IMG/VR virus record: IMGVR_UViG_3300042691_042003
Coordinates: 1 to 64,000 of that record
Reading direction: 5' to 3' (one strand)
Length of the DNA stretch: 64,000 nt
The first letter of the stretch is position 1. Every line of letters starts with the position of its first letter. Of this stretch, positions 1 to 63,457 are shown in pieces. A model generated the notes under the pieces. That model saw nothing but the letters and a program-made list of their open reading frames with translations. It did not search any database and was not told the DNA's origin. The position numbers and the translations under genes are program-made.

Positions 1-9614
<9,614 letters not shown>

Positions 9615-9629
9615 TCATTTGATTTATTT

Positions 9630-9640
9630 TTTCATATAAT
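9630..9640 (+). promoter_or_regulatory. TTTCATATAAT putative promoter box
   Basis: The same 11-mer lies in intergenic DNA at 9630, 17637 and 58333, each just upstream of a start codon. Confidence 0.55.
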
Positions 9641-14175: not shown

Positions 14176-15705
14176 ATGAGTAATTTTGAAAGAAGTATAG
14201 TTTCTATTATAGATCCTACTATTAAAACTGATCCAATAGCACAGGCTGATACTGAATCAAAAGAAGCTAGATCTGAAGGTACTGAAGCTATAGGAGAAGG
14301 GTCGAATACTAAAAATTCTTCTAGATGGGGTGCTTTTTTACCTCTTATTTTTATAAATACAAATAGATTTGATCAAGATCAAATCAGTTTAATGGTTGTT
14401 GAATTTGATGATAAAATTCCTACAATATCGGTTATATTAAAAGATCCAAACGGTAAATTTACGTTAGATGCACCTTTAGATGGGGATGTTATTTCTCTTT
14501 ATATTAGACCACCTGATGCGGCAAATCAAAAACCTATTAGAATAGATTTTGACATAACCGATATTTCAGGTAATCCTCCTTCTCAAACTTTTTCGGTTAA
14601 TGGTATTATGAAAATACCCGGATTCTTTGCTGAAGTTTGTAAAGATTTCCCTAAAGGAAATTCATTCGATCATCTACAAGATGTTTGTGAAGAAGTAGGA
14701 TTAGGTTTTGCTTCAAATGAAACTGCTACCGATGATTCAATGCCTAGAATTTGTGCATTTGAACCTTATCAATCTTTTGTTGATACAACAGTAATGCATA
14801 CATATAAAGATGATGATTCATTTTTTACTTGGTATATAGATCCTTTTTATTATCTTTGTTTAGTTAATATTAATAAACAATTTGACTTAGAAGATAAATC
14901 TGAAGAAATAAACATTAATTCTATCACTCCTTTTTCTGGAGGACAAAACGATGACGAGGCTGATGATACTTCTAAAGGTAATTTAGTTCTTACTAATCAA
15001 AGCGATAGAAATGGAACGAACATTTATATAGATCATTGGGCTGTTGATAATAAATCTGCTACAGTTTGGATAAAAAATGGTTATAAAAGATATTCACAAT
15101 ATTTAGAGTTAAATGAAGAAGGAGGAACAGAATATGTTAGTACTTTTGCGGATCCTTTGACTACTAAAGGTGCCGAAAGTGATGCAATTCTTCCTAAAGG
15201 GAGAAAGGGGGATAATTTTTACGAAAAGCAAATAAAATATAAATGGTTAGGAAAACAATCTATAGGTAATGTTCATGATAATTATATTTTTTCTAATCTT
15301 CTCAATTTTCAAAATCTTCAAGAAATAGAAAAATTAAGTCTTAATATAGATTTAGCTGGAATGAATTTTTATATTTACCGATATATGAGAATTCCAGTTA
15401 GTATATATAATGATGGTAGTAGAGGAACCGATAAATTACAGAGATTAAAAGATCGAGATAAAGCTTTAGGAGAAGATAATGATGATAATAATGAAAAAAT
15501 TATTAAGAGGGCATCAGGGGAAAATGAAGTGAATATAAATGATGTAGGAACCGATCCAAGAGATCAAGTACTAAATCAACACATTTCAGGATATTACGTT
15601 GTTAATACTATAAAATACGTTTATTCTCCTCCAGGACCTATTAAAATGAAGCTAAACTTGATTAGGAGAGAATGGCCGATTCCAGCAAAAAATAACGATT
15701 ACTAA
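14176..15705 (+). CDS. Putative baseplate hub protein (gp27/VgrG-N-like)
   Basis: Lies between gp53 and gp5; C-terminal SGYYVVNTIKYVYSP...KLNLIRREW resembles the end of hub proteins. Confidence 0.55.
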   Translation: MSNFERSIVSIIDPTIKTDPIAQADTESKEARSEGTEAIGEGSNTKNSSRWGAFLPLIFINTNRFDQDQISLMVVEFDDKIPTISVILKDPNGKFTLDAPLDGDVISLYIRPPDAANQKPIRIDFDITDISGNPPSQTFSVNGIMKIPGFFAEVCKDFPKGNSFDHLQDVCEEVGLGFASNETATDDSMPRICAFEPYQSFVDTTVMHTYKDDDSFFTWYIDPFYYLCLVNINKQFDLEDKSEEININSITPFSGGQNDDEADDTSKGNLVLTNQSDRNGTNIYIDHWAVDNKSATVWIKNGYKRYSQYLELNEEGGTEYVSTFADPLTTKGAESDAILPKGRKGDNFYEKQIKYKWLGKQSIGNVHDNYIFSNLLNFQNLQEIEKLSLNIDLAGMNFYIYRYMRIPVSIYNDGSRGTDKLQRLKDRDKALGEDNDDNNEKIIKRASGENEVNINDVGTDPRDQVLNQHISGYYVVNTIKYVYSPPGPIKMKLNLIRREWPIPAKNNDY

Positions 15706-17633
15706 TGGCATCACCTTTAAATAATTATAATTATAAAGATCCAGGTGTTCTAAGATTTAAAAAAACAAATCTTTATTATACTGAAGATCCTTATCTTCTT
15801 TATCAAGATCCTACTTGGCTAGGTTTTAAGCTATTTTTTAATTTCGATCAAGCCGATAGTAAGTTATTTGGATTAACCGAAAGTTATACAAATACTGCAT
15901 ATTCTTATCTTTTAAGGATAGGAGATAAGGCTAGAGCCGGATATATGGAAAAATTTGTAAAACATATCTACGAAATTAATAATAAAACTCCTTGGTTTTT
16001 TCAAACTATAACTGGCTTAAGTGAAGCATGGAAAAGAGGATATCAAGATGAAAATTTTAAACCTCTTCTTCCAAATGATAGAAAAATTGAAATAGGTTGT
16101 TTAGAATCTATCGATTTAAGAATATCTGCTTTAATGGATCTGTACAGAAAGTCTTGTTTTGATTGGTATCATAGAAGAGAAATTGTTCCTTGGAATTTAA
16201 GAAATTTTGATGTACTTATTTATGTTTATGAAATAAGAGAAATAAATAGAACGGGTAAACCTTCCCCTTCGGGTATGTTAGATCTTACAAGATTAGCTGG
16301 AATTCCTGATATTAATCAAAAACAACAATCTGAAAATAAAAGGTTGTTAGGTGAAGATCCTTACGGATCTGATGATAGTAAATCTCCTTTAAAACAATTA
16401 ATTGATAAAGGGAAAAGTATAATTGAAGGGGTTAAAGCTGATCCAATTCAAGGGATTAAATCTGCTTTAAATCCAAATACAGCAGGTAACGAAGCATCAA
16501 ATACACCAAACACAAATATAAATAGATTTTTATTTAAATTTAAGTATTGTGAATTCTTACCTGATGAATCAGGAGCAGTTTTAGAAAAAGTTGCCTCTTT
16601 TTCTGGAGGAGAAGGAGAAGCTGCTCAGCAAAAAATAGTTTTTTCTTATAGAGATGTAGAAGAGATCAATTTATATAATATCTATTCCGAGGATCAATAC
16701 GTTCAAGATAAAATTATACAACTTTTTGATCAGGCAGCTATTGACGATCCTAATTTAGTTTTTGCTAACGAAAATGGTAGTTTTAGGACTAATAATTTAA
16801 AAGAAAGACCTTCTTACGGCTTAGAGAGTGTTTTAAATGAAGCAGGATATGGAGTTCTGACTCCTTTTGCTTCTCTTGCAGGTGATAAATTAGAAAGATT
16901 AATTAGCTCTTATGCAGGAAAACTTCTGATGGGTAATATTTATGGATTCTCTCCTCTTAATGCCGCAGGAGCAGTTTCAGGAGTTCTCAGCGGAGATCCT
17001 ACTCAAGTTTTAGCAGGAGCACAAAATTTAGTAGGACAAATAGCTGGAAGTAAATCAGAAAAAAATAGAACGAATGATGTAGAATCAATAGGACCTATAG
17101 ATAAAGGTTCTTCACAATTTAATAATACGAACGATGTAACTTCAATAGGTGGAAGAAGAGCTGTAGATGGATCTTCTCTATCTAATAATACAAAAGATGT
17201 AGGATCTTTAGGAAATACTTATACTCCTGGTCCATCCATTACAAATAAGACAATTGATGTAGATTCTTTAGGTAGTACTTATGATCCTGGATTATCCCCT
17301 AGTAATAATACGAACGATGTAGATTCTTTAGGGCCCATAGAAAGAGGTCAATCTCCTACTAATAAAACTAATGATGTAGGATCTCTCGGAACTAATGATC
17401 CAGGACAGTCACCTTCTAATGCTACAAAAGATGTTAGTTCTTTAGGTTCTATAGCTAAAGGTGATTCTCCTATTAATAAAACTAATGATGTTGGTTCTCT
17501 TGGAAATAATGATCCGGGACAATCACCTTCTAATGCTACAAAAGATGTTGGTTCTCTTGGAACTAATGATCCAGGTCAATCACCTTCTAATGCTACAAAA
17601 GATGTAGGTTCTCTTGGAAATACATTTGGATAA
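15705..17633 (+). CDS. Putative baseplate/tail-tube-like protein with C-terminal repeat array
   Basis: 642 aa in the baseplate cluster; ten 19-21-aa repeats at the C-terminus. Confidence 0.5.
   Translation: MASPLNNYNYKDPGVLRFKKTNLYYTEDPYLLYQDPTWLGFKLFFNFDQADSKLFGLTESYTNTAYSYLLRIGDKARAGYMEKFVKHIYEINNKTPWFFQTITGLSEAWKRGYQDENFKPLLPNDRKIEIGCLESIDLRISALMDLYRKSCFDWYHRREIVPWNLRNFDVLIYVYEIREINRTGKPSPSGMLDLTRLAGIPDINQKQQSENKRLLGEDPYGSDDSKSPLKQLIDKGKSIIEGVKADPIQGIKSALNPNTAGNEASNTPNTNINRFLFKFKYCEFLPDESGAVLEKVASFSGGEGEAAQQKIVFSYRDVEEINLYNIYSEDQYVQDKIIQLFDQAAIDDPNLVFANENGSFRTNNLKERPSYGLESVLNEAGYGVLTPFASLAGDKLERLISSYAGKLLMGNIYGFSPLNAAGAVSGVLSGDPTQVLAGAQNLVGQIAGSKSEKNRTNDVESIGPIDKGSSQFNNTNDVTSIGGRRAVDGSSLSNNTKDVGSLGNTYTPGPSITNKTIDVDSLGSTYDPGLSPSNNTNDVDSLGPIERGQSPTNKTNDVGSLGTNDPGQSPSNATKDVSSLGSIAKGDSPINKTNDVGSLGNNDPGQSPSNATKDVGSLGTNDPGQSPSNATKDVGSLGNTFG
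17064..17630 (+). repeat. Ten tandem ~57-bp coding repeats, consensus NxTxDVxSLGxxDxGxSP
   Basis: Visible in both protein and DNA; the last copies (GATCCAGG..CACCTTCTAATGCTACAAAAGATG) are near identical with a 57-bp period. Confidence 0.9.
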
Positions 17634-17636
17634 CAA

Positions 17637-17647
17637 TTTCATATAAT
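17637..17647 (+). promoter_or_regulatory. TTTCATATAAT putative promoter box
   Basis: Exact copy of the motif at 9630 and 58333, 6 nt before the ATG. Confidence 0.55.
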
Positions 17648-17653
17648 TAAAAT

Positions 17654-18448
17654 ATGCTTAATAATCAAACAGCTTATAAAGACGATCTTGTAGGAACTTC
17701 TTGGGTAGGGGAAGTAGTGGATATTGAAGACCCACAAAAAATAGGAAGAGTTCGAGTAAAAGTATACGGTAAATTTGATGATATTCCTACTGAATCTATT
17801 CCTTGGGCATATCCAGGAAATAATCAAACAGGAGGATCTGATAGTGGAGGAGGATTTTTTTCCGTACCTAAGTTAGGTTCTTTAGTTTCAATTAAATTTG
17901 ATAATGGGAATATTTATCATCCTGAATATTTTTTTAATCAAAAAATTTCAGATGAAACAAAAGAAGAAATAAGTAATTCATATCCTAATGCTCATGTTTT
18001 AATATATGATACAGTTACTGAAGAATTTGTTAAAGTCTTCTTTACTGAAGAAAAAGGTCTAATGTTTGATTATAAGAAAACTCAAATTAATATTAAGCCT
18101 GATAAATCTATAGATATTCATACAGAATCTAATAACAGTAAAATTCTAATAGAAGACGACGGAAAACTTACAGTTTATCATAAAGGAGAAATGAAAATTG
18201 ATTGTGATGCTAATGTTAATCTTACATCAAAAAAAGATGTAAAAGTTAAGTGTACTAATTTAACGATAGATCATTCGGCTTCTATAAAATTAGGTGCAGC
18301 AGCAAGTGAATTAGCAGTTTTGGGAAATCAAATGATGACACTTTTTAATACACATACACATGTAGGAAATTTAGGTGCTCCTACTTCCCCTCCTATGGCA
18401 CCTATGACACCAACTCATTTAAGTCAAAAACAAGTTAAAGTTCAATAA
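17654..18448 (+). CDS. Central spike protein, gp5/VgrG/gpV-like, no lysozyme domain
   Basis: OB-fold signature (WVGEVVDIEDPQKIGRVRVKVYG...WAYP...FSVPKLGSLVSIKFDNGNIYHPEY), a beta-helix-like segment, and a C-terminal HxH (NTHTH) metal-binding apex as in P2 gpV. Confidence 0.85.
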   Translation: MLNNQTAYKDDLVGTSWVGEVVDIEDPQKIGRVRVKVYGKFDDIPTESIPWAYPGNNQTGGSDSGGGFFSVPKLGSLVSIKFDNGNIYHPEYFFNQKISDETKEEISNSYPNAHVLIYDTVTEEFVKVFFTEEKGLMFDYKKTQINIKPDKSIDIHTESNNSKILIEDDGKLTVYHKGEMKIDCDANVNLTSKKDVKVKCTNLTIDHSASIKLGAAASELAVLGNQMMTLFNTHTHVGNLGAPTSPPMAPMTPTHLSQKQVKVQ

Positions 18449-18450
18449 TT

Positions 18451-18816
18451 ATGCCATTAATTCCAACCGTTCTTAAATCAGGAATACAATTAGGGTTAGA
18501 ACCTCTGATATTTGCTAAAACTCAATCTTCTTTTAAAGCTGCTATGGCTAAATTTAAAGAAGTATCAGAAAAACAAACTGGTAATGAAGGAAAGGATGTA
18601 TTTAATGCTGCAAATACTGCAGCTTCTCTAGAATTTGCTAATAATATGAAGCAATTAGCAAATGATATAGCAATGGTCGTTTCTACTAACGTAGATGCAT
18701 ATATAAAGACAGCTACGATTATTATTCCTCCAGGTATAGCTGTTACTACTGCTGGTTCTCCTGCTGCACAAGCTGGAGCTTCTATAGCTCCTTCTCCTCC
18801 AGCAATTATTACATAA
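18451..18816 (+). CDS. Small spike-associated virion protein (hypothetical)
   Basis: Directly after the spike gene; Ala/Pro-rich C-terminus. Confidence 0.4.
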   Translation: MPLIPTVLKSGIQLGLEPLIFAKTQSSFKAAMAKFKEVSEKQTGNEGKDVFNAANTAASLEFANNMKQLANDIAMVVSTNVDAYIKTATIIIPPGIAVTTAGSPAAQAGASIAPSPPAIIT

Positions 18817-18833
18817 ATTTTAAGTTGAATTGA

Positions 18834-18841
18834 GATATATA
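18834..18841 (+). promoter_or_regulatory. GATATATA putative late promoter
   Basis: Recurrent motif upstream of the S1 gene. Confidence 0.5.
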
Positions 18842-18873
18842 TAATATCTTAATACCTTATTATTTTATTATAA

Positions 18874-20037
18874 ATGATTCAAAAAAATAATTCGCTTCAG
18901 GATTTCGATTGGGATCTTTTTGAAGCTTCTTCTCCTTCACACCTTAGGTCAAATAACCGAATTAAAAAATTAAAAGGAGATAAATCTAAAGTTTTTAGCA
19001 GAATGCCTTATGCTCAACAAATGTATGAAGCATATAGTGGTATAGAACAAAAAATTGCAGAAATTACTACTGGTTCTGTAGTACAAGGTAAAGTTGTTTC
19101 AATTAATAAAGACTTTGCTATTGTAGATGTTAATTGGAGAGAAGATGCTATGATCGATCTCCGTAAAGAAGAACCTGATTTTCTTCGTTATATTCAACCA
19201 GGTTTTCCTGTTGAAGTTATTATTGAAAGAATTGGAAACCATCAAGGATCTTCTTCAAAAAGTATTATTGCTTCTTATTCTAAAAATATTCTTGCTAAGA
19301 AAAAACAAGAGCTTTTAGAATCAATTGGAGAGCCGGTAGCTTATCTAGGAACTGTTACTGAATTAATCCATGGAGGATATTTTGTTGATGTTTCTGGAGT
19401 ACAATGCTTTATGCCTGGTTCATTAGGAGGTATGAATAAGCTAGTTAATTTTGAAGATCTTATTGGAAAATCTCTTTATGTAACGATTATTAATTATTCT
19501 AAAGAAAAAGATTATTTAGTTGTTTCTCATAGAGAATATCTTAAGACTTTAGTTCCTGAAGAGATTTCTAAACTTCAAATGGGAATAGAATATGATGGTT
19601 TTGTAACTGGAACTAGCAAACATGGAGTATTTGCTGAATTTAATGGATGTTTAACAGGTCTTATTTCTAGATCTGATATTCTCCCTCAATATTTAGATGA
19701 TTTTGATAATAGAAGAATTAAAGCTGGATCGAGTATTAAATTCTTTATTAAAGAAATTATTGATAATGATAAAATTGTTCTTTCACAAAAACCTGTAACG
19801 ATCGAACCTTCTGCATGGGATGATATTGAAGAAAGATACAAAGTTCCTTCTACCGTTACCGGAAAGATTAAGAAAATTGTTCAATATGGAGCTTTTATCG
19901 AATTAGAACCTAAAATCGTAGGTCTTCTTCATAAATCACATTTAAATGAAAGTTTTGAATTAGAAGTAGGTCAAGAAATTGAAGTTAAAATCACTAGAAT
20001 AGATAAAGAATCCAAAAAAGTTGATTTTGCCATGTAA
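18874..20037 (+). CDS. rpsA: Ribosomal protein S1-like protein (four S1/OB domains)
   Basis: Four S1 domains (GSVVQGKVVSI; YLGTVTELIHGGYFVDVSGVQCFMPGS; GIEYDGFVTGTSKHGVFAEF; VTGKIKKIVQYGAFIELEPKIVGLLHKSHL) plus an N-terminal DFDWDLFE. Confidence 0.85.
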   Translation: MIQKNNSLQDFDWDLFEASSPSHLRSNNRIKKLKGDKSKVFSRMPYAQQMYEAYSGIEQKIAEITTGSVVQGKVVSINKDFAIVDVNWREDAMIDLRKEEPDFLRYIQPGFPVEVIIERIGNHQGSSSKSIIASYSKNILAKKKQELLESIGEPVAYLGTVTELIHGGYFVDVSGVQCFMPGSLGGMNKLVNFEDLIGKSLYVTIINYSKEKDYLVVSHREYLKTLVPEEISKLQMGIEYDGFVTGTSKHGVFAEFNGCLTGLISRSDILPQYLDDFDNRRIKAGSSIKFFIKEIIDNDKIVLSQKPVTIEPSAWDDIEERYKVPSTVTGKIKKIVQYGAFIELEPKIVGLLHKSHLNESFELEVGQEIEVKITRIDKESKKVDFAM

Positions 20038-20045
20038 TCTTCTTA

Positions 20046-20053
20046 GATATATA
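20046..20053 (+). promoter_or_regulatory. GATATATA putative late promoter
   Basis: Recurrent motif, here GATATATAAATA, 16 nt before the ATG. Confidence 0.55.
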
Positions 20054-20069
20054 AATAAAGAAGGTACAA

Positions 20070-21431
20070 ATGGATTTTAATTCTCAAGCACTATTTCCTT
20101 TATTTGAAAAATCACTTATTAGAATAACCGCCGATTTTGAATCAGATAAAGATCCAAGATCGGTGGTTTCTGATTTGTCTAAAGAGCTAAAAATTAAAGT
20201 CTCTTCAGAAGAACCATCATCTTATAATTTCAATTTAAAAAGAGGTGATGATGGAGTTTATCATTTAATTACTCCTTTTATTTTTTATCGAGATTCTCGA
20301 TTAGTTATTATTAATCTTTTTAAATGGATTCAGAGAAGTGGTAAAACTTCTATAAACACAAATCTTTTGATAGATTTAAAGTTTATGGATCGTCAAGAAG
20401 GTCCTTTTAAAGGAACTCTTCTTTCTACGGCAACAAAAATCGATAATATTTCAAAAACTAAATTTATTCTTCAATTCGATGAAGATTTAGTTTATAAAAT
20501 ATTCCCTTCTAGGAAAAATTATTTTATATCTCAAACTATTGAAAGATTTGAACCTACAAGTAAATTTGTATCTAAAGGATATTCTTCAATAGATCCTAAA
20601 TTCTATCAAGTACCTTCAACTTCTAATTGCGGAATAAATTTTGAAACCTTATTTGAGGGTTTTCTTCGAATGCAGTATATAGGAGGGACTAGATATGAGG
20701 ATAAAGTAGATGATGTTTTAAAAATTATTAATCAATTTTGTGTAATCGCTTGGGATTCTACGATAAATAGTAATCTGACAAAAGAAAATTTGATTAAATT
20801 TGAAAAAATCGTAGATAAAAATAAAAAAATAAGAGAATCTTATTTAGATTTTGCAATTTTTAGAAAAAATTACCCTAAGATAAAATTTACGGTAGATTTA
20901 GTAGATAATCATAAATCTTTAGATATATTTTATCAATCTCTTAGAGAAAGGATTTTCGAGATTCTTTCTAATATAGATACAAAAAAGGGATTTGAGCTTA
21001 ATTATGATTCATCAGTTTCAACTTTTCAAATAAATGAAGGAGAAATTGATTGTCGAAATATTAATGGTATTGAATTTATTAATTGTACAATAAAAGGGGG
21101 AAATTTTAGTAAATGTGATTTCTTTAATTGTGAAATAAATGATGCCGTTTTAAACGAATGTAATGTTTTTTTAGAAACGAAAGCAAACAGATGTTTTTTA
21201 AACAATACTTTTACAAATAGAACTTCTACTATTTTCAATTGTGATTTTAGTGGAGTAAATGGAGTTTTAAACGGTAAAATGGAAGGAGGAGTATTCAGAA
21301 ATGGAAAGGTAGGATTATTTGCTGATATATCTCCAAATACTACAGTTATACAATATCAAAAACTTAAAAGTGGATATGTTGTTGCTGGAGATCAAATAAT
21401 AATTCCAACAAAAAAATTTAGACAGTTATAA
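20070..21431 (+). CDS. Degenerate amidoligase (COOH-NH2 ligase)-like protein with C-terminal pentapeptide/beta-helix repeats
   Basis: Motif order is like phage amidoligases (ADFE; HLITP; GINF...LRMQYIGGxxYE) but with catalytic positions altered; Cys-containing 5-residue repeats (INCTI, SKCDF, FNCEI, NECNV) near the C-terminus. Confidence 0.5.
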   Translation: MDFNSQALFPLFEKSLIRITADFESDKDPRSVVSDLSKELKIKVSSEEPSSYNFNLKRGDDGVYHLITPFIFYRDSRLVIINLFKWIQRSGKTSINTNLLIDLKFMDRQEGPFKGTLLSTATKIDNISKTKFILQFDEDLVYKIFPSRKNYFISQTIERFEPTSKFVSKGYSSIDPKFYQVPSTSNCGINFETLFEGFLRMQYIGGTRYEDKVDDVLKIINQFCVIAWDSTINSNLTKENLIKFEKIVDKNKKIRESYLDFAIFRKNYPKIKFTVDLVDNHKSLDIFYQSLRERIFEILSNIDTKKGFELNYDSSVSTFQINEGEIDCRNINGIEFINCTIKGGNFSKCDFFNCEINDAVLNECNVFLETKANRCFLNNTFTNRTSTIFNCDFSGVNGVLNGKMEGGVFRNGKVGLFADISPNTTVIQYQKLKSGYVVAGDQIIIPTKKFRQL

Positions 21432-22207
21432 TGGATAATTGTTCAACATCAAACGTTCCTTATACGGAAGATGAATTTATTGCTTTAGTTCAGCAAGAAT
21501 TAAGCGTTGCTTGCTCTTTACCTTTTACAGTTCCTGTTACTGAAATACAAAGAATTATTAAATTCTCAGCTGATTGGTTTTATAAAAAATATGAAGATGC
21601 AGTAGAAGAAAGATATTATTTTATCTCTACTAAATCATTTCAATCAGAGCAATTTAAAAGAGAAAGAACTGTAACTATGCCTGATTGTGTTTTTTCAGTT
21701 TGGCAATTAAAGAAGCTAAAAGAAGATTTCAGTAGAATGATGTCTTTCGATGGTACTGCTGACTTTGGTATAGAACGTCTATTTCTTTCTGATTCTGTTT
21801 CTATAGGTCAAGGAACGGAAAATCTAATGTATTATACTCTTAATCTTTATTGGTTAGATGTTGCTTCTCATATAATCAATCATACGATTAGCTATAATTA
21901 TAATAGAAATTCAAAAAGGCTTTTTTTTGCAGGACAAACTCCTGATAGGGATTGTGTTGCAATGTGTTATGTTAAAGTTCCTATGGAACATTTGATGAAA
22001 GATGAAATTTTTTATCGTTATGTCGTTGCAAAATGTAAGATACAGCTTTCTAGAATATTAGGTACTTTTAATTTTAATCTTCCTGGAAATATACAAATTA
22101 ATTATGATCTTATACGTTCAGAAGGTCAGGACGAAATAACTAAAATTGAAGAAGAAATTAAAGGAGAAGAAGGAATGGATTTCTTCTTTACTTCTGGAGG
22201 ATCTTAA
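21431..22207 (+). CDS. Neck / head-tail adaptor protein, T4 gp13-like
   Basis: Size, position, and C-terminal AKCKIQLSRILGTFNFNLPGNIQINYDLIRSEGQDEITKIEE typical of gp13-like neck proteins. Confidence 0.7.
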   Translation: MDNCSTSNVPYTEDEFIALVQQELSVACSLPFTVPVTEIQRIIKFSADWFYKKYEDAVEERYYFISTKSFQSEQFKRERTVTMPDCVFSVWQLKKLKEDFSRMMSFDGTADFGIERLFLSDSVSIGQGTENLMYYTLNLYWLDVASHIINHTISYNYNRNSKRLFFAGQTPDRDCVAMCYVKVPMEHLMKDEIFYRYVVAKCKIQLSRILGTFNFNLPGNIQINYDLIRSEGQDEITKIEEEIKGEEGMDFFFTSGGS

Positions 22208-24391: not shown

Positions 24392-24639
24392 TGCATAGAG
24401 ATTCTTTATATAATAAAATTCTTACTGATTTCGAAGAAAGAAAATCGATGGGATATGATTATATGAAAAATGGTTTAATATCTAAATTTGTTTCTCCTTT
24501 GCTTTTCGGCAATCCTAGATTAGAAACATTTTTAAATAAATTAGATGGAATTTTTATAGAATTAACAGAATCAGTAAAAAGGATTCAATTCTATACAAAT
24601 TACACTATAGATAAAAACGATAAGAGATTTAATAACTAA
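24391..24639 (+). CDS. Small baseplate-associated protein
   Basis: 82 aa, translationally coupled (TAATG) on both sides. Confidence 0.55.
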   Translation: MHRDSLYNKILTDFEERKSMGYDYMKNGLISKFVSPLLFGNPRLETFLNKLDGIFIELTESVKRIQFYTNYTIDKNDKRFNN

Positions 24640-27600
24640 TGTATCAATATTATAGGTTTTTTAATAAGAAAGGTGAATATTGTAACTTTGAATATGATTC
24701 TACTAAAGATAAGTGGACTGGTAGGTTAGAATTCCAAACTGTTTCTGAAGGATTAATAGAAGATCAGCAAATTTATATTTTAGAAGAAGTTTTTAATACA
24801 AATACTAATTCTAAAGTTTATGTTTATCCTCATTCTAATTACTCTTATTCGGGAGCAACTTCTAATGATTTAATTGCATCTTTTGATACTTCTATAAATC
24901 CGGTTCCTGAAATATTTTTATATCAAATAGAAGAATCTTCTGGAGATGCTGGATTAGTAAAATCTTATTCAGTTAGTTATGATTTAGATTATGATTTAGG
25001 GCCTACTTATATGAGCTCTAACTTCGATTATCCTAATATTAAATCAACCGATGTTATAAATGAAAAGCCTTTACAAATAAATGTTGCTTTCGGACCTACC
25101 GGAGAAGATCTTTATACTTCGGTTTTAACTCTTAAAGATAGTTCTAATCATGTTATTGCGGAAATTACTCTTTATGGAGAAGGCTTAGAAGAAGATGAAA
25201 GGTTAAAATATCTTCTTATGTCTCTAGGACATGATATTCTCCCTGAAGATTATATTATATTTGATACTGCTGATATAAAAGAAGAAAAACCCGATTGGGA
25301 TCTAATAAATAGAAAAAGAAAAGAGCTTCTTTTAGAATATCATAATATTTTTCCTTATTTAGGATCATATAAAGCCATAATAAATATTCTTAAATTTTAT
25401 GGATATCAAAATGTCCATATGAGAGAATATTGGAAAAATGTCGATATCACTAGTAAAAATTACGGTAAATATCGTCAGACCGATATAATAGATCTTTTCA
25501 CTAATTCTCCGGATCCTCAAATTTCAAAATTAATTCCTAGTAAAGTTTATCGTAAAACTTCGCTTTTTGGTTTATTTTATGATATAAACGTCGAAACTGG
25601 AGAATTTGATGATGACGGAACTCCTATAACTGAAGAGGTTTTTAAATTTAGTCCAGAAGAAGTTTTAATAAAAATATTTGCACTAAAGAAGAAATTAATG
25701 GGATATTATCTCCCATTTAGTGCAAAAATAGTTGATATTATAGGCGAAGCTATTTACTTTGCCAATTATAATATTAATATTGTAACTTCTCAAAATAGAA
25801 TAGATCAAGTTTCTTTAGGAATAAAACCTAAATATGAAGTTTTTCCTGAAAGGAGCGGATATTTACAAGATTTAAGACCTTTACAATATTTAGGAGCTCC
25901 TATTGGTCCAGATTTAAACTTAGGGGGAAATTCAAATTATTATATTTATAGAATATATGTTTCTCAAGGTGTTTCTGCTTCTCCTCCTATTACTGCTAAT
26001 ATAGATATTGGATTAACTATAGGTTCTACGAATTCCGGAAAAGTAAATTTTTATGACGATAAAAGAAGAGGTAGATTTACTTATACTAGAGATGAAGTAA
26101 TGGAATCTATTGTAGAAGAATTTAATAATCCTACATACATACCTTCTTATAATACAAAAGAAGGTATAGAATGGATAAAAAGAAATTATTTTGCTTATAT
26201 AGAGCCTGATAATCCTGGATTTATTAGGATAGTTCAAAAAAATATACTTCCAGGATATACTGCTTCTCTAAATTTAGGATCTGCTAATGGAGGAATATCT
26301 ATTTTTCCAGGAGCAACTGTTTCTCCTGCCATAAATATATCCCCAGGTTATTACTATGGAGCAACTGGTGCTCCTATGTCACTCTATAAGACTGCTTATT
26401 TAGGTTATTTTGAGAATACAAAAGTACCTATTACAAATTTAAATGATGTCCCTAATGCTCCTGTAGGATATCCAGTTATACTTAGAAATAAAACTTTTGA
26501 TATAAATTGGGATAATGCAGATGTTACTTTTAATCAAGTTGATAAAGTAGGAGCAACTTATAGTACACTTCTTTCCAAATTTACTTCTTCTTTTCTAGGT
26601 TATACCGGTCCTTTAGGATGGACTTCTTTTGCAAAACCTTGGGCTTCAGGTCCTACTTCTGGTTCTACTGCTGGAGCTACTTATATTAGCGTAGGAGTTA
26701 CATCAAGTGTCTCTGAATTCCCTTATAACGGTTGGCCTTATAAAAATAATTTTTCTTGGGAAGAATTAGGATATTATGGATATTATCAAATGCAGTGGAA
26801 GGTGTATAAATTCGAAGATGAATATCCTTCATGGAGTTATGATAGTGGAATTAGATCTATTAGTGATATAAACGAAATAAGTCTTAGTCTTCCTTATATA
26901 GGTAAATATTCAGTAGAATTGAGATTATGGGATCTCTATAATAATCAATCTTTTATTATAGATGAAGATTGGATCGAAGTTAAAATTCGAGATGTTGATT
27001 TTATAGCTTGGTATTCAAAAAGAGAAGAAGATTATTTAATAGAAACTCCTAGATATAAAACTCAACAGGACGAAATAATGGATCCTCTTCCTTTAGGTTC
27101 GCCTCCAGATCTTTTAACTTGGGATGATTATTCTTCTTCTTGGGATTTACCCGTACATCCTAATGAACCTATAGACATGGGAGAAATTTCATTTAATTCA
27201 TTAGATTCGATAGAATTTTATCAAACTATGGATTTTCCTATTGACAATCCTCTTGTAGATCGTTATCCTTATACATTTAATTTATTAGGAGAACTACCTA
27301 CTTGGAAAGATACTTATCATTTATGGTGGGATAATACCGGCACAAAAGTTACAGAATGGAAAATTACAAATTGTTCTCCTGTAGGTCCTACATATGGATA
27401 TATTTTTGCTACTAGATCAAATTCAACTTTAAATTTAGGAGCCACAATGAATTATATTATAGGTCCTGCTGGTTGGACTGGTCCTACTAGTTCTTCAATT
27501 TCGGGTTCTACTGGAGATATAACTTATGTTGAAAGTGGAAAAAGAACTTATGTTCATAATGGATTATATTGGAAATATGTTTTAGATGAATTAGATGCTA

Positions 27601-28526
27601 TAAGGATTTCTGTTTCAGGTAATTCTTCTAATAAAAAAGCTGATTCTCTTTCAGTTATAAAAGCTTTAAATCTAATAGATCCTGAAGAACATCCAATTCT
27701 TTCAGATTTTATTTATTATTATGAAGAAAAATATAATTCTTCTTACGGATTAGATTCTTACGTTACCGCAGTTTCTAAAAAATTTGATAAAGGAGGAAGA
27801 CATAAATTTGCATACAAAAATCTTGTAGGAAGTACTTCATCTTTTGAAACTGTTAATTTTGGTCTTTTAGGAGATATACCTACTTATTTTGAAATTTATA
27901 AATTACCTTCATCTTCAGGAGTTTCCCCTTCAGCTTTTACAATAAATTATTTAGATAAAGAAGTTAGAGGTTATACTACATACACTCATAATACTAGCAC
28001 TATTACATTATCTGCATTATGTAATGAATTAAATGGACCTAGTGCTCAGTCAGCTCCTGTTATAGGTGACTTTATTTATAATATGGTTTATGGTGCTTCA
28101 GGCTGGACTGGATCGGGAGCTTCTTCTATTACCGAAGTAAAAATACAAGGAGTTTCTAAATTCTTTACTGAACCTCAATCAATTTCAATAGGTTATACAG
28201 GAGGAATGGAAGGAAATTCATATGGAAGATCATTAATAAGAAATTTATCATGGGATAATGTTAGAATTCATAAATATACTCAAGAGCTTCCTCTTCTAAC
28301 TACTGTTAATTTTACTTTTGACAATTGTAAAATACCAGGAAAGACTAAATTCGAATGGATTTTAGAGAGAGAAGATGATCCGACTTTCGAGAATATATAT
28401 TATAATAATCCATACTTCTCGTATATGTTTAATCAAAGAGGAAGTTATTCTGTTACTCTTACGATTACTGATACAAATGGAAATAAGAATAAGATTAAAA
28501 AAACAGAAATAATAAAAATCGTCTAA
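24639..28526 (+). CDS. Large baseplate wedge protein (gp7-like) with PKD/Ig-like domains
   Basis: GSYKAIINILKFYGY wedge motif; PKD-like YIGKYSVELRLWD and C-terminal FSYMFNQRGSYSVTLTITDTNGN. Confidence 0.55.
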   Translation: MYQYYRFFNKKGEYCNFEYDSTKDKWTGRLEFQTVSEGLIEDQQIYILEEVFNTNTNSKVYVYPHSNYSYSGATSNDLIASFDTSINPVPEIFLYQIEESSGDAGLVKSYSVSYDLDYDLGPTYMSSNFDYPNIKSTDVINEKPLQINVAFGPTGEDLYTSVLTLKDSSNHVIAEITLYGEGLEEDERLKYLLMSLGHDILPEDYIIFDTADIKEEKPDWDLINRKRKELLLEYHNIFPYLGSYKAIINILKFYGYQNVHMREYWKNVDITSKNYGKYRQTDIIDLFTNSPDPQISKLIPSKVYRKTSLFGLFYDINVETGEFDDDGTPITEEVFKFSPEEVLIKIFALKKKLMGYYLPFSAKIVDIIGEAIYFANYNINIVTSQNRIDQVSLGIKPKYEVFPERSGYLQDLRPLQYLGAPIGPDLNLGGNSNYYIYRIYVSQGVSASPPITANIDIGLTIGSTNSGKVNFYDDKRRGRFTYTRDEVMESIVEEFNNPTYIPSYNTKEGIEWIKRNYFAYIEPDNPGFIRIVQKNILPGYTASLNLGSANGGISIFPGATVSPAINISPGYYYGATGAPMSLYKTAYLGYFENTKVPITNLNDVPNAPVGYPVILRNKTFDINWDNADVTFNQVDKVGATYSTLLSKFTSSFLGYTGPLGWTSFAKPWASGPTSGSTAGATYISVGVTSSVSEFPYNGWPYKNNFSWEELGYYGYYQMQWKVYKFEDEYPSWSYDSGIRSISDINEISLSLPYIGKYSVELRLWDLYNNQSFIIDEDWIEVKIRDVDFIAWYSKREEDYLIETPRYKTQQDEIMDPLPLGSPPDLLTWDDYSSSWDLPVHPNEPIDMGEISFNSLDSIEFYQTMDFPIDNPLVDRYPYTFNLLGELPTWKDTYHLWWDNTGTKVTEWKITNCSPVGPTYGYIFATRSNSTLNLGATMNYIIGPAGWTGPTSSSISGSTGDITYVESGKRTYVHNGLYWKYVLDELDAIRISVSGNSSNKKADSLSVIKALNLIDPEEHPILSDFIYYYEEKYNSSYGLDSYVTAVSKKFDKGGRHKFAYKNLVGSTSSFETVNFGLLGDIPTYFEIYKLPSSSGVSPSAFTINYLDKEVRGYTTYTHNTSTITLSALCNELNGPSAQSAPVIGDFIYNMVYGASGWTGSGASSITEVKIQGVSKFFTEPQSISIGYTGGMEGNSYGRSLIRNLSWDNVRIHKYTQELPLLTTVNFTFDNCKIPGKTKFEWILEREDDPTFENIYYNNPYFSYMFNQRGSYSVTLTITDTNGNKNKIKKTEIIKIV

Positions 28527-31177: not shown

Positions 31178-34100
31178 ATGAACACGAAATACTCATTAAC
31201 TACACTTCTAAGTAATTTATTAAAACTTCAGAATAATGGATATCAGATAATAACATCATTATCTGATGTTGTTTCTTCTAGTTCAGATACTGTTGGTGTT
31301 GATGTAATGGATTCAACTGGAGTTATACAAAAAGTTTATATTCCTTCTTATGGATCTTTGAAGAATCAATTAGTAAAGCTAGAAAGTGATATAAAAAATA
31401 TTTCTGGTATAGGAGATACAACTTCTTCGGTTCAGCTTTCAGATGGAACTTTTAGAAAAATTTTAGTTTCTTCTCTTCAAAAAGAAGCAGAAGATATTAA
31501 ATCTATGTCAGTTCCTACTAATTTTAATAAAAGAGAAAATTGGTTCTTTGAATCATTTATGAATCCTCTTTTATATGTTTCTTTTGATCTTACTGGTCAA
31601 GTAAAGTACGAAACTGAAAATATAGAAGTTGCAAGATATATTCTTAATTTAGATTCAGATCAAAAAGTAAGAGTATTTAATCAGAATTTTAACGGTAAAT
31701 CCGATATTGCATTTGAAAAATTTGTAAAAACTATTTTAGATAATAATATAACTTTCTTTTTAGATAAAGAAGTTATTGATATGCCACCCAGAAAATTAAG
31801 ATTTTCTGGTAATTTTACGGTTACAAATATGACAGACGTAACTGTAGATGAAACTATTGATAGTGCTACATTCCAAAAAAGAATTTTAAGGCTACAATTA
31901 GATACACTTTTTTATAATGATAGTCAATCAAGATTTCAAAAAACACAACAGCTAAAAATAGGTGATTCTTTAGTAGTTAATAAAGGTCTAAAAAATACTA
32001 GATATAAAATTACTTCGATAGATTCTTCTACTAGATCCATAGATATTAGATTAGTAGAAGGATTTGATGTAGTAACGATTGGTACTGACGTTTTATCTTT
32101 TTACGGAGAAGAAAAATCTACTGTTACTGCAGATATTAATATAGGTTTTAACGAATATTGTGTAATTTTTGTTAAGCCTATAGATCCTGATTCTAGAATA
32201 CAATCAGTTAATTGGTCACCTGGAGTCGGAATTTATACGAATAATCTTTCAATCGTAGATCCGAAAACCGGTAATTCTACTACATTATCTACATTTTATC
32301 AAAATGAAGTTGTAGATTTTGGAGCTTATTTATATTCAACCGTAAAAGATAAAACACCTCCTTCAATATTTGGAATTTATCCAGATCCTCCTACAATACA
32401 ATCTTCAGATTTTAAAGTTTTTCAGATAAATCAACATTTAACTGAATCTGGATCTTTAACTAAATTACAGAAGCTACAATCAGAAAAGCTAAGAATACAA
32501 TCTCAAATACAATCTAACGATAAATCTATTTTAGATTTAAGAACTAAGATTCAAACTACTAAGTACACTTCTGAAAAATTAAAAGATGTTGACGAAAATC
32601 AGCTAACAAAATTAATTAATGAAAGAGATTCTCTCTCTTCTCTCTTTGCTTCTTCTATTGATGAGATTAATAAGATTTCGGTTTCCGAAGGGGCCGAAAA
32701 TTTAACTCCAAAATATCGTCTTAGAGGATTCTTTTCTTATCCTAAACCGAAAACTTCAGATAGAACTTCTCCTCAAGAAGTAGTACAATTTATCATACAA
32801 TATCGATATGTAAAAAAAGACGGATCAGCAAATCAACCTCAACAAATTACTTTTACTGACACGGACGGTCAAACTAGAAGAGGAACTTTTTCTAATTGGG
32901 TTCAATATGTTACTGATGTAAGAGAAAGGAAAGTAGATCCTAATACTGGTAAAGCTTATTGGGTTACTGAAGATTTAGAAAACGCTGATTCTGTTAATAT
33001 TAATCAAGTAGATATTCCTATACAACAAGGAGAAGGAATTGAATTAAGAATTAAATCTATTTCTGAAGCTGGTTGGCCAGTTACTCCTTTAAAATCAGAT
33101 TGGTCTACTATTGTTAAAATTGATTTTCCGGCAGAATTCGAATCTTTAGCCGATGCAAATTCTATAATAGAACAGGCTAAGAAGGATTCGGTTAAAGTTG
33201 ATCTTCAAGCAGAAATAACTAGTATGAATCTAGATAAAATTTCGGATCAATCTTTTACTCAAGGAAATAAATTTTTTGTTTCTGATTCTATGCATATAGC
33301 TTCAGGATTTCTTACTTCTGAAAATAATATAATTTCCCTTTATGATAAATTAGTTTCATTAGAAACTGAATTATCAAAAATCAGAGCTCTCGTTACTGTT
33401 GCTAAAGGAACTCTCTCGGTTAGAATTGTCGATGAATCTGGACAAGAATATAAAGTAGAAAATAATTCTACCGTTAAAATATTTGCTGGAAATTATAGAG
33501 ATGAAGTTCAATCATTACAAGTTCAAAAGGGTGTAATTCTTTCTAAAAATTATTTTGTTAAAATATCTAATTCTTCAGCTTCTACATTAGAAATGTATTC
33601 TAGGATTTACGGTTCTAGATTTGATAGAGTTAATTATTCTTTTAATAATAATGATGAAGACGCTAATTTTAATCAAAATGATACTGATTATAATAACATA
33701 AGAAGATATGATTATGTTCCTGTAGGTCTTTCCAATCCTGACCCTGATCATGTTGAACAATATGGATTTATTAGAAATTCTCCTGATCAATCTTCACAAG
33801 TTAGAGGTCAATTTATAAACTCTCGCTATAGATCGGTTGATGGAAAAAGATATTTATACAATAAACCTTTTAATCCTACTGTAGCCCCTGGATCTGGTGT
33901 AGCTCCTTTAATATTTTCTTCTGATGGGTATGTTTCCGGTTTTAATGGAACATGGGGTCAAGCTACTACAGTAGATCAAATGGAATATACAATTCATCAA
34001 CCATTTGCTTCTGGATCTTCAGCATTTAGTGGAAGTAGTTATTTTATATGGTCCGGACTTAATAATATCAGTTTTTTAATAGGTGCATCCTCTGCAACAC

Positions 34101-63449: not shown

Positions 63450-63457
63450 CATATAAT
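63450..63457 (+). promoter_or_regulatory. CATATAAT putative promoter box
   Basis: Same core as at 9633, 17640, 49798 and 58336; follows a terminator. Confidence 0.5.

What the first reader, a model, noticed from the sequence alone, without database searches (positions are those of the whole stretch)
18834..20037. Phage-encoded ribosomal protein S1 inside the baseplate operon under a late-type promoter
Seen: four S1 domains, an N-terminal DFDWDLFE, its own GATATATA box, and a position between spike and neck genes. Established: S1 recruits A/U-rich leaders, Bacteroidota largely lack Shine-Dalgarno initiation, their S1 begins with an F(N/D)WxxFE-type segment, and S1 homologues have been reported in huge phages. 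Inference: this shortened (4- versus 6-domain) S1 replaces or competes with host S1 late in infection to favour the phage's A-rich leaders.
Basis: partly seen in the sequence, partly recalled or inferred. Interest (0 to 1): 0.68.

Follow-up and report, generated by a model that had tools for sequence, protein, structure and literature searches.

The report
Jumbo-phage four-domain ribosomal protein S1 homologue
A 246-kb phage, probably of Bacteroidota, carries a conserved four-domain copy of ribosomal protein S1 among its baseplate and neck genes; S1 genes in huge phages are already published, but this copy keeps the N-terminal helix by which Bacteroidia S1 sits on the ribosome, so ribosome binding can be tested directly.

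Summary
ORF 18874-20037 (+, 387 aa) has four S1/OB domains that line up with domains 1-4 of bacterial bS1. Domains 5-6 are missing. Ahead of them lies a helix-loop-helix whose first helix carries DFDWDLFE. That matches the F(N/D)Wxx(F/Y) motif found in 76 of 80 Bacteroidales RpsA and the F. johnsoniae bS1 helix that contacts uS8/uS2.

The gene lies between a gp5-like hub and a T4 gp13-like neck gene. This position is fixed in every relative examined and extends to a 462-kb huge phage.

The GATATATA box is a real motif across the genome: 22 copies on the + strand against 1 on the - strand, and 13 intergenic against about 1.4 expected. It precedes the portal, prohead protease and tail sheath genes, and it is kept upstream of S1 in 38 of 49 relatives.

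The genome lacks Shine-Dalgarno sites.

The protein belongs to a phage-only S1 clade shared with Lak and the >634-kb huge phages. It is only 24-31% identical to cellular Bacteroidota S1.

Untested: ribosome binding, late timing, and any preference for phage mRNAs. Phage S1 in SD-less huge phages was published in 2020, so this is a new, well-characterised member of a known kind.

The parts
18834..18841 (+). GATATATA box, a putative late-class promoter element for the S1 gene, 40 nt upstream of the ATG
   Evidence: Genome-wide: 22 on + against 1 on -. Thirteen are intergenic, against 1.35 expected. Ten sit 21-29 nt upstream of an ATG. It precedes the portal, prohead protease and tail sheath genes. 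It is invariant in four relatives whose flanking sequence has diverged. It is exact in 38 of 49 distinct upstream regions of relatives, at -34 to -57.
18842..18873 (+). A/U-rich, unstructured, SD-less leader with ACCTTA at 18854-18859 (-20)
   Evidence: MFE -1.8 kcal/mol, z -0.08. In relatives, ACCTTTAA sits at a fixed -19 to -12, followed by an A run. The leaders of the hub, p453 and gp13-like genes lack it.
18874..20037 (+). CDS of the 387-aa four-domain S1 homologue (stop codon included)
18901..18924 (+). Residues 10-17, DFDWDLFE: first N-terminal helix with the Bacteroidia-type F-x-W-x-x-F motif
   Evidence: The model has a helix at residues 13-19. D12 and W13 are nearly invariant. The motif matches F[DN]Wxx[FY] in 76 of 80 Bacteroidales RpsA and F. 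johnsoniae bS1 residues 11-20, which contact uS8 (PMC13000457).
19006..19041 (+). Residues 45-56, PYAQQMYEAYSG: second N-terminal helix, just before D1
   Evidence: The model has a helix at 47-55. Q48 and Y51 are invariant and A47 and Y54 are nearly so. The segment beginning at residue 58, just after this helix, aligns from E. coli S1 residue 10 (EESLKEIE). Lak-A2 has SYAQELYDAY at the same place.
19069..19275 (+). S1/OB domain 1 (about residues 66-134)
   Evidence: Strands 69-134 in the model. Scores best against cellular D1.
19327..19539 (+). S1/OB domain 2 (about residues 152-222), the most conserved part (CFMPGSLGG, VVSHREYL)
   Evidence: Scores best against cellular D2.
19579..19794 (+). 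S1/OB domain 3 (about residues 236-307), the most divergent. The His of the canonical GLxH(I/V)S motif is replaced (GLISRS).
   Evidence: The residue reading comes from the sequence and from general knowledge of S1 domains.
19837..20034 (+). S1/OB domain 4 (about residues 322-387), canonical RNA-binding type (YGAFIEL, GLLHKS)
   Evidence: Best Pfam stretch, residues 327-386. Scores best against cellular D4.
17654..18448 (+). gp5-like baseplate hub/spike OB-domain protein, upstream neighbour
   Evidence: PF04717 and phrog_37871/430. A homologue lies upstream of S1 in 49 of 66 relatives.
18451..18816 (+). 121-aa protein of unknown function between the hub and S1
   Evidence: No family hit. A small gene occupies this slot in relatives.
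20046..20053 (+). Second GATATATA box, 24 nt upstream of the next gene
   Evidence: Variants are kept in relatives.
20070..21431 (+). 453-aa protein that always follows S1; function unknown
   Evidence: It lies downstream of S1 in 79 of 79 relatives. The only leads are weak: pentapeptide repeats and a viral amidoligase-like fold.
21431..22207 (+). T4 gp13-like neck/connector protein
   Evidence: phrog_211. PF26809 on the syntenic orthologues. A direct Pfam scan of this protein itself found no family.

Best explanation
The gene encodes a phage-lineage paralogue of ribosomal protein bS1. It keeps the parts of S1 needed for work on the ribosome: an N-terminal helix-loop-helix of the Bacteroidia type, the ribosome-proximal domains D1-D2, and the RNA-binding domains D3-D4. 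It lacks D5-D6, which are dispensable in E. coli.

The proposed mechanism is inferred, not shown. The N-terminal helices and D1-D2 dock at the bS1 site of the host 30S subunit, on uS2/uS8. D3-D4 then hold the unstructured, A/U-rich, SD-less leaders near the mRNA channel. The phage would thereby supply or replace S1 activity, which limits initiation on SD-less mRNAs in Bacteroidia.

The gene is a fixed part of the baseplate-neck gene block. It carries the same GATATATA box as the portal, protease and sheath genes, so it is most likely made together with the virion proteins, when demand for translation is highest.

Shown: homology, domain order, motif conservation, synteny, the motif classes, the lack of SD sites, and the phage-only clade.

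Inferred: 30S binding, timing, and benefit to the phage. Selective favouring of phage mRNAs over host mRNAs is the weakest step.
For: Homology and structure.
- Colinear homology to bS1 D1-D4.
- The model shows two N-terminal helices and four OB folds. Its best structural matches are bS1 on the 30S.

N-terminal region.
- SLQDFDWDLF compared with F. johnsoniae FLANFNWHNF: the L, F, W and F positions are shared. That helix was built into 30S density in contact with uS8, and the bS1 N-terminus associates with uS2 and uS8 (PMC13000457).
- The same motif is in 76 of 80 Bacteroidales RpsA and in nearly all 120 family members.

Functional background.
- The two C-terminal OB domains of E. coli S1 are dispensable for growth (bioRxiv 10.1101/2021.10.20.465233, abstract).

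Genome context.
- The genome lacks SD sites: 7% of genes carry an SD-like core against a 14% background. G is at 5-10% and A at 45-57% over -1 to -20.

Conservation.
- More than 120 clusters at 54-94% identity, all 380-416 aa apart from two short sequences of 310 and 370 aa on small contigs.
- 475 IMG/VR contigs encode a relative.
- When loci are picked by the gp13-like neighbour, 18 of 18 hold S1 in the same place.

Expression signal.
- The late-class box is shared with virion genes and conserved upstream of S1.
Against: - No direct evidence of 30S binding. The uS2 + S1(1-135) complex prediction gave no verdict.
- Identity to any cellular S1 is only 24-31%, and scores are far below the NCBIfam rpsA cut-offs.
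- D3 has lost the canonical His.
- The loop between the two N-terminal helices carries a basic stretch of about 15 residues that Bacteroidales S1 lacks.
- No RNA data support the timing.
- Host leaders in Bacteroidia are also SD-less and A-rich, so there is no evident basis for discrimination.
- The host is inferred, not identified.
- The fixed position among virion genes could instead mean a virion-associated role.
Confidence: 0.55

Rival explanations
1. It is an RNA-binding protein that works off the ribosome. It could be an RNA chaperone or mRNA protector, or a cofactor of a phage enzyme, as host S1 serves Q-beta replicase and T4 RegB. In that case it has only kept the S1 architecture.
For: S1 domains are common in non-ribosomal RNA-binding proteins, and Al-Shayeb et al. 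caution that 'true' rpS1 is hard to confirm and allow a role 'on or off the ribosome'. Scores fall far below the rpsA equivalog cut-offs. D4 is a canonical RNA-binding S1 domain. Structural matches include S1 in the Q-beta holoenzyme. T4 exploits host S1 for RegB (PMC9409239).
Against: This would not explain the near-invariant N-terminal FxW helix and the YAQxxY helix, which in cellular S1 serve docking on uS2/uS8. Nor would it explain why D1-D2, the domains that do not bind RNA, are the best conserved part.
Confidence: 0.2
2. It is made late because it is packaged into the virion and ejected with the DNA. It would then act on host ribosomes or on the first phage transcripts at the start of the next infection, not late in the current one.
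For: The position is fixed between the hub and neck genes in all relatives, out to a 462-kb phage at 45% identity. It carries the same box as virion genes. Jumbo-phage proteins are known to target ribosomes immediately on infection (PMC10914614, abstract).
Against: No virion proteomics exist for this clade. No packaging signal or propeptide was recognised. Gene position alone is weak evidence.
Confidence: 0.12
3. It is a structural baseplate or tail protein built from OB folds, with no RNA role.
For: It lies inside the baseplate module, next to an OB-fold hub protein.
Against: It shows full-length colinear homology to bS1 with the same domain order, E 6e-53. D4 has canonical RNA-binding features. 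It carries S1-type N-terminal docking helices. No PHROG structural family matches it.
Confidence: 0.04
4. It is a host rpsA fragment, from mis-assembly or a recent capture with no adapted function.
For: Several 'phage' records in GenBank with S1 hits are really host DNA. Examples are a Bacteroidales rpsA on MT835643.1 and an Acinetobacter rpsA.
Against: The family signatures are absent from 185,579 species genomes. All 151 sampled Bacteroidota S1 are only 24-31% identical. In the tree, the phage S1 sequences form their own clade outside the cellular one. Synteny in phage contigs is conserved. The reading frame is intact and strongly conserved.
Confidence: 0.01

Closest known systems
S1 homologues of huge phages (Al-Shayeb et al. 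2020, PMC7162821): LR756500 (462 kb), LR756501-LR756504 and LR745206 (634-735 kb, predicted Bacteroidetes hosts)
   Same: Multi-domain S1 proteins in phages over 200 kb that lack SD sites. They form one clade with the window's family in the tree, SH-aLRT 100. They are also about 360-410 aa, so four-domain. LR756500 is 45% identical and also places S1 after a gp5-like hub.
   Different: The window's phage is smaller, at 246 kb. Its family is a distinct, very populous subclade, 54-94% identical within itself. LR756500 lacks the FDW motif. The N-terminal docking motif, the fixed position in the structural module, and the promoter and leader elements are not mentioned in the passages of that paper read here.
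Lak megaphage S1 homologue (Prevotella phage Lak-A2, MK250019.1)
   Same: The N-terminal architecture is the same: SFNWTPYED, then a basic loop, then KVFSHESYAQELYDAY. It belongs to the same phage S1 clade. Its host is a Bacteroidota (PMC7162821).
   Different: Only 26% identical over 77% of the query. It sits on a long branch. Its genomic context was not examined.
Bacteroidia ribosomal protein bS1 (for example F. johnsoniae bS1; Bacteroidales RpsA, about 595 aa)
   Same: The N-terminal F(N/D)Wxx(F/Y) helix followed by a second helix, then D1-D4 in the same order. It serves an SD-less translation system.
   Different: Six domains against four. Identity is 24-31%. The phage protein has a longer, basic inter-helix loop. 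Scores are well below the rpsA cut-offs. It is not nested within the sampled cellular clade.
Phage-encoded bS21 of Bacteroidetes-infecting phages (Chen et al. 2022, PMC9723584)
   Same: A phage copy of a 30S platform protein involved in initiation. By that paper's title, its expression is linked to late-stage replication. The phages reach 331 kb.
   Different: It is a different protein. This genome has no bS21 gene.
T4-type late promoters (TATAAATA; from general knowledge)
   Same: A single A/T-rich octamer, with no -35 element, ahead of virion genes.
   Different: The sequence is GATATATA(A/T). The RNA polymerase or sigma factor that reads it is unknown, and no transcript ends were mapped.

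Membership tests
Bacterial ribosomal protein bS1 (rpsA) | Tandem S1/OB domains colinear with D1-D4 of bS1 | tested here: met
   Pfam matches four stretches. Residues 48-386 align to model positions 31-372 of 580. Residues 58-385 align to E. coli S1 10-344. The domain-by-domain matrix is highest on the diagonal, narrowly so for D3.
Bacterial ribosomal protein bS1 (rpsA) | Score reaches the curated equivalog cut-off | tested here: not met
   The best is 180 bits against a cut-off of 524 (NF004952), and 157 against 720 (NF004953).
Bacterial ribosomal protein bS1 (rpsA) | Six-domain architecture of the Gram-negative/Bacteroidota type | tested here: not met
   387 aa with four domains; the D5-D6 equivalents are absent.
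Bacterial ribosomal protein bS1 (rpsA) | N-terminal segment that docks on uS2/uS8 | tested here: inconclusive
   The sequence motif and the helix-loop-helix are present and conserved. Binding itself was not shown, and the complex prediction gave no verdict.
Bacterial ribosomal protein bS1 (rpsA) | Physical association with the 30S subunit and a role in initiation | not testable with these tools
   This needs biochemistry or cryo-EM.
Bacterial ribosomal protein bS1 (rpsA) | Encoded in a cellular genome as the housekeeping copy | tested here: not met
   It lies on a phage record. The family signatures are absent from 185,579 species genomes.
Huge-phage S1 homologues (Al-Shayeb 2020; Lak) | Encoded by a phage genome over 200 kb | tested here: met
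   246,081 bp with direct terminal repeats. Phage structural and replication genes are present.
Huge-phage S1 homologues (Al-Shayeb 2020; Lak) | The genome lacks recognisable Shine-Dalgarno sites | tested here: met
   SD-like cores occur in 19 of 265 genes, below background; G is depleted upstream of start codons.
Huge-phage S1 homologues (Al-Shayeb 2020; Lak) | Groups phylogenetically with the published phage S1 proteins | tested here: met
   One clade, SH-aLRT 100. LR756500 is sister to the family at 98. Caveats: long branches and only three sequences from outside Bacteroidota.
T4-like late promoter class | A/T-rich -10-type box specific to virion genes | tested here: inconclusive
   The box precedes the portal, protease, sheath and baseplate-block genes, whereas replication genes carry CATATAAT. 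Variants also precede two homing endonuclease genes. No transcript data exist.
T4-like late promoter class | A dedicated late sigma factor or phage RNA polymerase that reads it | not tested
   No search for gp55/gp33-like or phage RNA polymerase genes was made.

The most novel reading that the evidence does not exclude
The S1 paralogue may be locked into the baseplate-neck block because it is a virion cargo. It would be ejected with the DNA and pre-load host 30S subunits through its Bacteroidia-type N-terminal helices, so that the first phage transcripts are translated at once. Many of those transcripts appear leaderless or carry very short A/U leaders. The conserved ACCTTTAA element, fixed at -19 in its own leader, could be an autoregulatory operator. 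The invariably adjacent 453-aa protein could be a partner or a modifier.
Probability: 0.1. Interest if true: 0.8.

Novelty: new member of a known kind. Interest (0 to 1): 0.45.

Why it matters
Whether phage 'ribosomal proteins' really enter host ribosomes is still largely open, and S1 is the hardest case because the S1 domain is so widespread.

This family gives a concrete test. Its N-terminus matches, residue for residue at the aromatic positions, the helix of F. johnsoniae bS1 that a 2026 cryo-EM structure places on uS8/uS2. It is also a core gene, not a sporadic one, in a large clade of environmental jumbo phages.

If it docks on the ribosome, it would be a phage-made initiation component for an SD-less translation system, and a tool for studying how Bacteroidia choose start codons. 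If it does not, that would caution against reading phage S1 genes as ribosomal.

Tried and rejected
- Complex prediction. Complex prediction with F. johnsoniae uS2 (RS2_FLAJ1) and S1 residues 1-135 scored 0.55, but a control with uS2 replaced scored 0.53. The result is no verdict and is not used as evidence either way.
- PHROGs found no family for the S1 protein.
- N-terminus against PDB sequences. Residues 1-75 alone gave only chance hits.
- The PDB hit named 'Ribosomal protein S1 homologue' (28jw/9tvu) belongs to a chloroplast ribosome and is not relevant.
- Genome scan with the family signatures. Nothing was found in 185,579 species genomes. I take this as evidence for a phage-only family.
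- RNA evidence. The holders found are recorded or guessed as DNA and kept as contigs. One run labelled RNA-Seq is probably DNA. Nothing can be said about expression or transcript ends.
- Megablast of 20 kb against GenBank phages found no match.
- Rfam found no family in the window.
- The sigma-70 and terminator scans gave nothing above chance around the gene.
- bS21 is absent from the genome.
- Limits of the tree. Only three sequences from outside Bacteroidota were available (Acinetobacter, a Staphylococcus contig, a Microcystis phage). The tree cannot say from which phylum the phage clade arose.
- The large representative search was not run. The word search and family scans had settled the protein's identity.
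- Host contamination and a structural OB-fold protein were both considered and rejected (see the rival explanations).
Full report
**What is there**

The window is the first 64 kb of a 246,081-bp IMG/VR virus record with direct terminal repeats. The genome is 31% G+C, and 265 of 270 simple ORF calls lie on the + strand.

ORF 18874-20037 (+) encodes 387 aa.
- Pfam finds four S1 stretches, E 6e-29.
- NCBIfam rpsA models align along the whole protein: residues 48-386 to model positions 31-372 of 580. Scores are 100-180 bits, far below the cut-offs of 370-900.
- phmmer aligns residues 58-385 to E. coli S1 residues 10-344.
- A profile of the family hits a 591-aa S1 chain (9zcd_A) and E. coli S1 about equally, 158 and 151 bits.
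- An AlphaFold2 model on 49 family members (mean pLDDT 77.9) shows helices at 13-19 and 47-55, then four OB folds.
- The best Foldseek matches are E. coli bS1 on 30S complexes, 5e-27.
- A domain-by-domain score matrix against a Bacteroidales RpsA pairs phage D1, D2, D3 and D4 with cellular D1, D2, D3 and D4 (68, 96, 42, 111). The missing domains are therefore D5-D6. D3 is the most divergent, and its pairing is narrow: 42 against 40 for D5.

**The N-terminus**

Residues 10-17 are DFDWDLFE.

A 597-aa S1 on GenBank 'phage' record MT835643.1 is really a Bacteroidales rpsA. It is 86-88% identical to the S1 of Parabacteroides, Bacteroides and Muribaculaceae, and it starts with ...ENFDWDAFE. Of 80 Bacteroidales rpsA loci, 76 carry F[DN]Wxx[FYWH].

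A 2026 cryo-EM study modelled F. johnsoniae bS1 residues 4-40 on the 30S as a helix-loop-helix. Residues 11-20 (FLANFNWHNF) contact uS8, and the N-terminus as a whole associates with uS2 and uS8 (PMC13000457). The phage sequence SLQDFDWDLF shares the L, F, W and F positions.

The second phage helix, PYAQQMYEAYSG, has Q48 and Y51 invariant and A47 and Y54 nearly invariant. It lies just before D1. The HMMER alignment to E. coli S1 starts immediately after it: phage residue 58 pairs with E. coli residue 10. Between the two helices the phage proteins have a basic stretch, K(I)KKHPGDxSKVF, that Bacteroidales S1 lacks. It resembles the KK(V/I)K(V/I)F segment of other S1 proteins from GTDB phylum Bacteroidota.

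The phage protein keeps what looks like the docking module.

**A phage-only, core gene**

The word search found more than 120 clusters at 54-94% identity. All but two short sequences on small contigs are 380-416 aa, and some lie on contigs up to 326 kb. IMG/VR holds 475 contigs with a relative. The family signatures CFMPGSLG and Y(I/V/L)VVSHR(E/D)Y occur in none of 185,579 species genomes. All 151 sampled genomes of the Bacteroidota phylum have an S1 only 24-31% identical to it.

In a maximum-likelihood tree (LG+C20, quick search) the window's family, LR756500, LR756501/2/4 and Lak-A2 form one clade, SH-aLRT 100. LR756500 is sister to the family at 98. This clade lies outside the clade of sampled cellular Bacteroidota S1, which has support 97. 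The branches are long and only three sequences from outside Bacteroidota were available, so the origin of the clade remains open. A recent host capture is excluded.

The other huge-phage S1 proteins are also about 360-410 aa. Lak-A2 has the same N-terminal layout: SFNWTPYED ... KVFSHESYAQELYDAY. Al-Shayeb et al. report that the genomes over 634 kb and the Lak phages are predicted to infect Bacteroidetes.

**Position**

The gene order in the window is:
- gp5-like hub, 17654-18448 (PF04717)
- a 121-aa gene
- S1
- a 453-aa gene
- T4 gp13-like neck gene, 21431-22207
- gp25-like gene
- gp6-like wedge gene

. A direct Pfam scan of the window's own gp13-like protein found no family. The name rests on the PF26809 mark of its syntenic orthologues and a phrog_211 connector hit.

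The same order is found in relatives at 57-68% identity. Among 80 IMG/VR loci, the 453-aa gene follows S1 in 79 of 79, and a hub homologue is detectable upstream in 49 of 66. When loci are chosen by the gp13-like gene instead of by S1, 18 of 18 related loci have S1 in place. The 462-kb LR756500 also has hub, one gene, then S1. S1 is thus a fixed member of this module, unlike typical patchy auxiliary genes.

**The box**

Within the window, GATATATA is not over-represented: 8 found against 8.4 expected. Across the genome it is clearly non-random:
- 22 on + and 1 on -.
- 13 intergenic, against 1.35 +/- 1.1 expected.
- 10 lie 21-29 nt upstream of an ATG, and the S1 copy lies at 40 nt.

Genes behind [G/A]ATATATA include the portal, prohead protease and tail sheath genes and the genes starting at 12013 and 20070. 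Variants also precede two homing endonuclease genes.

A different box, CATATAA(T/A), precedes the SSB, DNA polymerase, DnaB, clamp loader, exonuclease and dUTPase genes.

A third element, TATTATATTAGCTATATCAAATTA, marks small ORFs between 163 and 230 kb.

Upstream of S1 the octamer is invariant in four diverged relatives. It is exact in 38 of 49 distinct upstream regions, at a variable -34 to -57. A variable distance to the ATG fits a transcription signal. 'Late-type promoter' is therefore a reasonable reading from sequence, but no transcripts were available.

**Translation context**

SD-like cores occur upstream of 7% of genes, against a 14% background. G is at 5-10% and A at 45-57% over -1 to -20. 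This fits the description of Bacteroidia as lacking SD sequences and relying on upstream adenines (PMC13000457 abstract).

The S1 leader is unstructured.

In relatives it carries ACCTTTAA at a fixed -19 to -12, which the neighbouring genes' leaders lack. The window's own copy reads ACCTTA at -20.

**Mechanism**

The most likely reading (about 0.55) is docking at the bS1 site through the N-terminal helices and D1-D2, and capture of A/U-rich leaders by D3-D4. This would supply or replace S1 activity while virion proteins are being made.

Two published results support the plausibility. [quoted passage not shown] Preference for phage mRNAs is not supported, because host leaders are A-rich too.

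The rivals are an RNA-binding role off the ribosome (0.2), virion cargo acting early in the next infection (0.12), a structural protein (0.04) and host contamination (0.01).

The complex prediction gave no verdict.

**Novelty**

S1 genes in SD-less huge phages, and the proposal that they redirect initiation, were published in 2020. Metagenomic hints are older. New here:
- the Bacteroidia-type docking motif;
- the monophyly of Bacteroidota huge-phage S1 proteins;
- the core status and fixed position in the structural module;
- the promoter and leader elements.

Verdict: a new member of a known kind, of moderate interest.

Noticed in passing
window 9633-9640, 17640-17647, 63450-63457; elsewhere in the genome G000:C1 90977, 98355, 157632, 207957, 218200, 232042, 235071, 239527, 241316: CATATAA(T/A) lies exactly 12-14 nt upstream of the ATG of 12 genes, and 24-32 nt upstream of about 9 others. 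There are 23 intergenic CATATAAT copies against 1.3 expected. The 12-14 nt spacing leaves room only for a leaderless or near-leaderless mRNA if the box acts as a -10 element. The class is enriched for replication genes but also includes the gp5-like hub gene.
   Followed up: partly
window 18854-18859; relatives L145-L224, positions -19 to -12 before the S1 start codon: The S1 leader in relatives carries a conserved ACCTTTAA at a fixed distance from the start codon, followed by an A run (48 distinct upstream regions). The leaders of the hub, p453 and gp13-like genes lack it. It could be a translational operator or enhancer, but this is unexplained.
   Followed up: partly
window 20070-21431: The 453-aa gene follows S1 in 79 of 79 relatives. 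It has no Pfam or PHROG family. The only leads are weak: C-terminal pentapeptide-like repeats and an N-terminal fold near viral amidoligase-like proteins (TM about 0.5, on a low-confidence model).
   Followed up: partly
window 15705-17633: The C-terminal third of this 642-aa protein, just upstream of the hub gene, consists of repeated units of about 19-20 aa (...NKTNDVGSLG / NDPGQSPSNATKDV...), visible in the translation.
   Followed up: no
window 3-9614, 24639-28526, 31178-34789, 34810-39651, 39664-43713: Five very large ORFs of about 1200-3200 aa. The first is open at the window's start. The first 8 kb are richer in G+C (0.36-0.40) than the rest (about 0.29). Their functions were not examined.
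   Followed up: no
G000:C1 204550-211695 and 225490-225887 (outside the window): ARAGORN calls five tRNA genes (two Met, two Leu, one Arg-TCT) and a tmRNA-like gene whose unusually long predicted tag ends ...PVLMAA. This was not checked against Rfam.
   Followed up: no
G000:C1 163302-205263 (outside the window): An intergenic element of about 90 nt recurs upstream of at least six small ORFs: GTAATATCCGTGTACCTTTTTT ... GATTTTTTTC ... TTTGTATTATATTAGCTATATCAAATTA. It may be an early promoter region.
   Followed up: partly
window 17600-21500 in public runs: Identical contigs occur in runs labelled 'fungus metagenome'. Diverged relatives occur in aquaculture, freshwater and plankton metagenomes, and some conserved S1 segments reach high contig depth in one aquaculture run.
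   Followed up: partly
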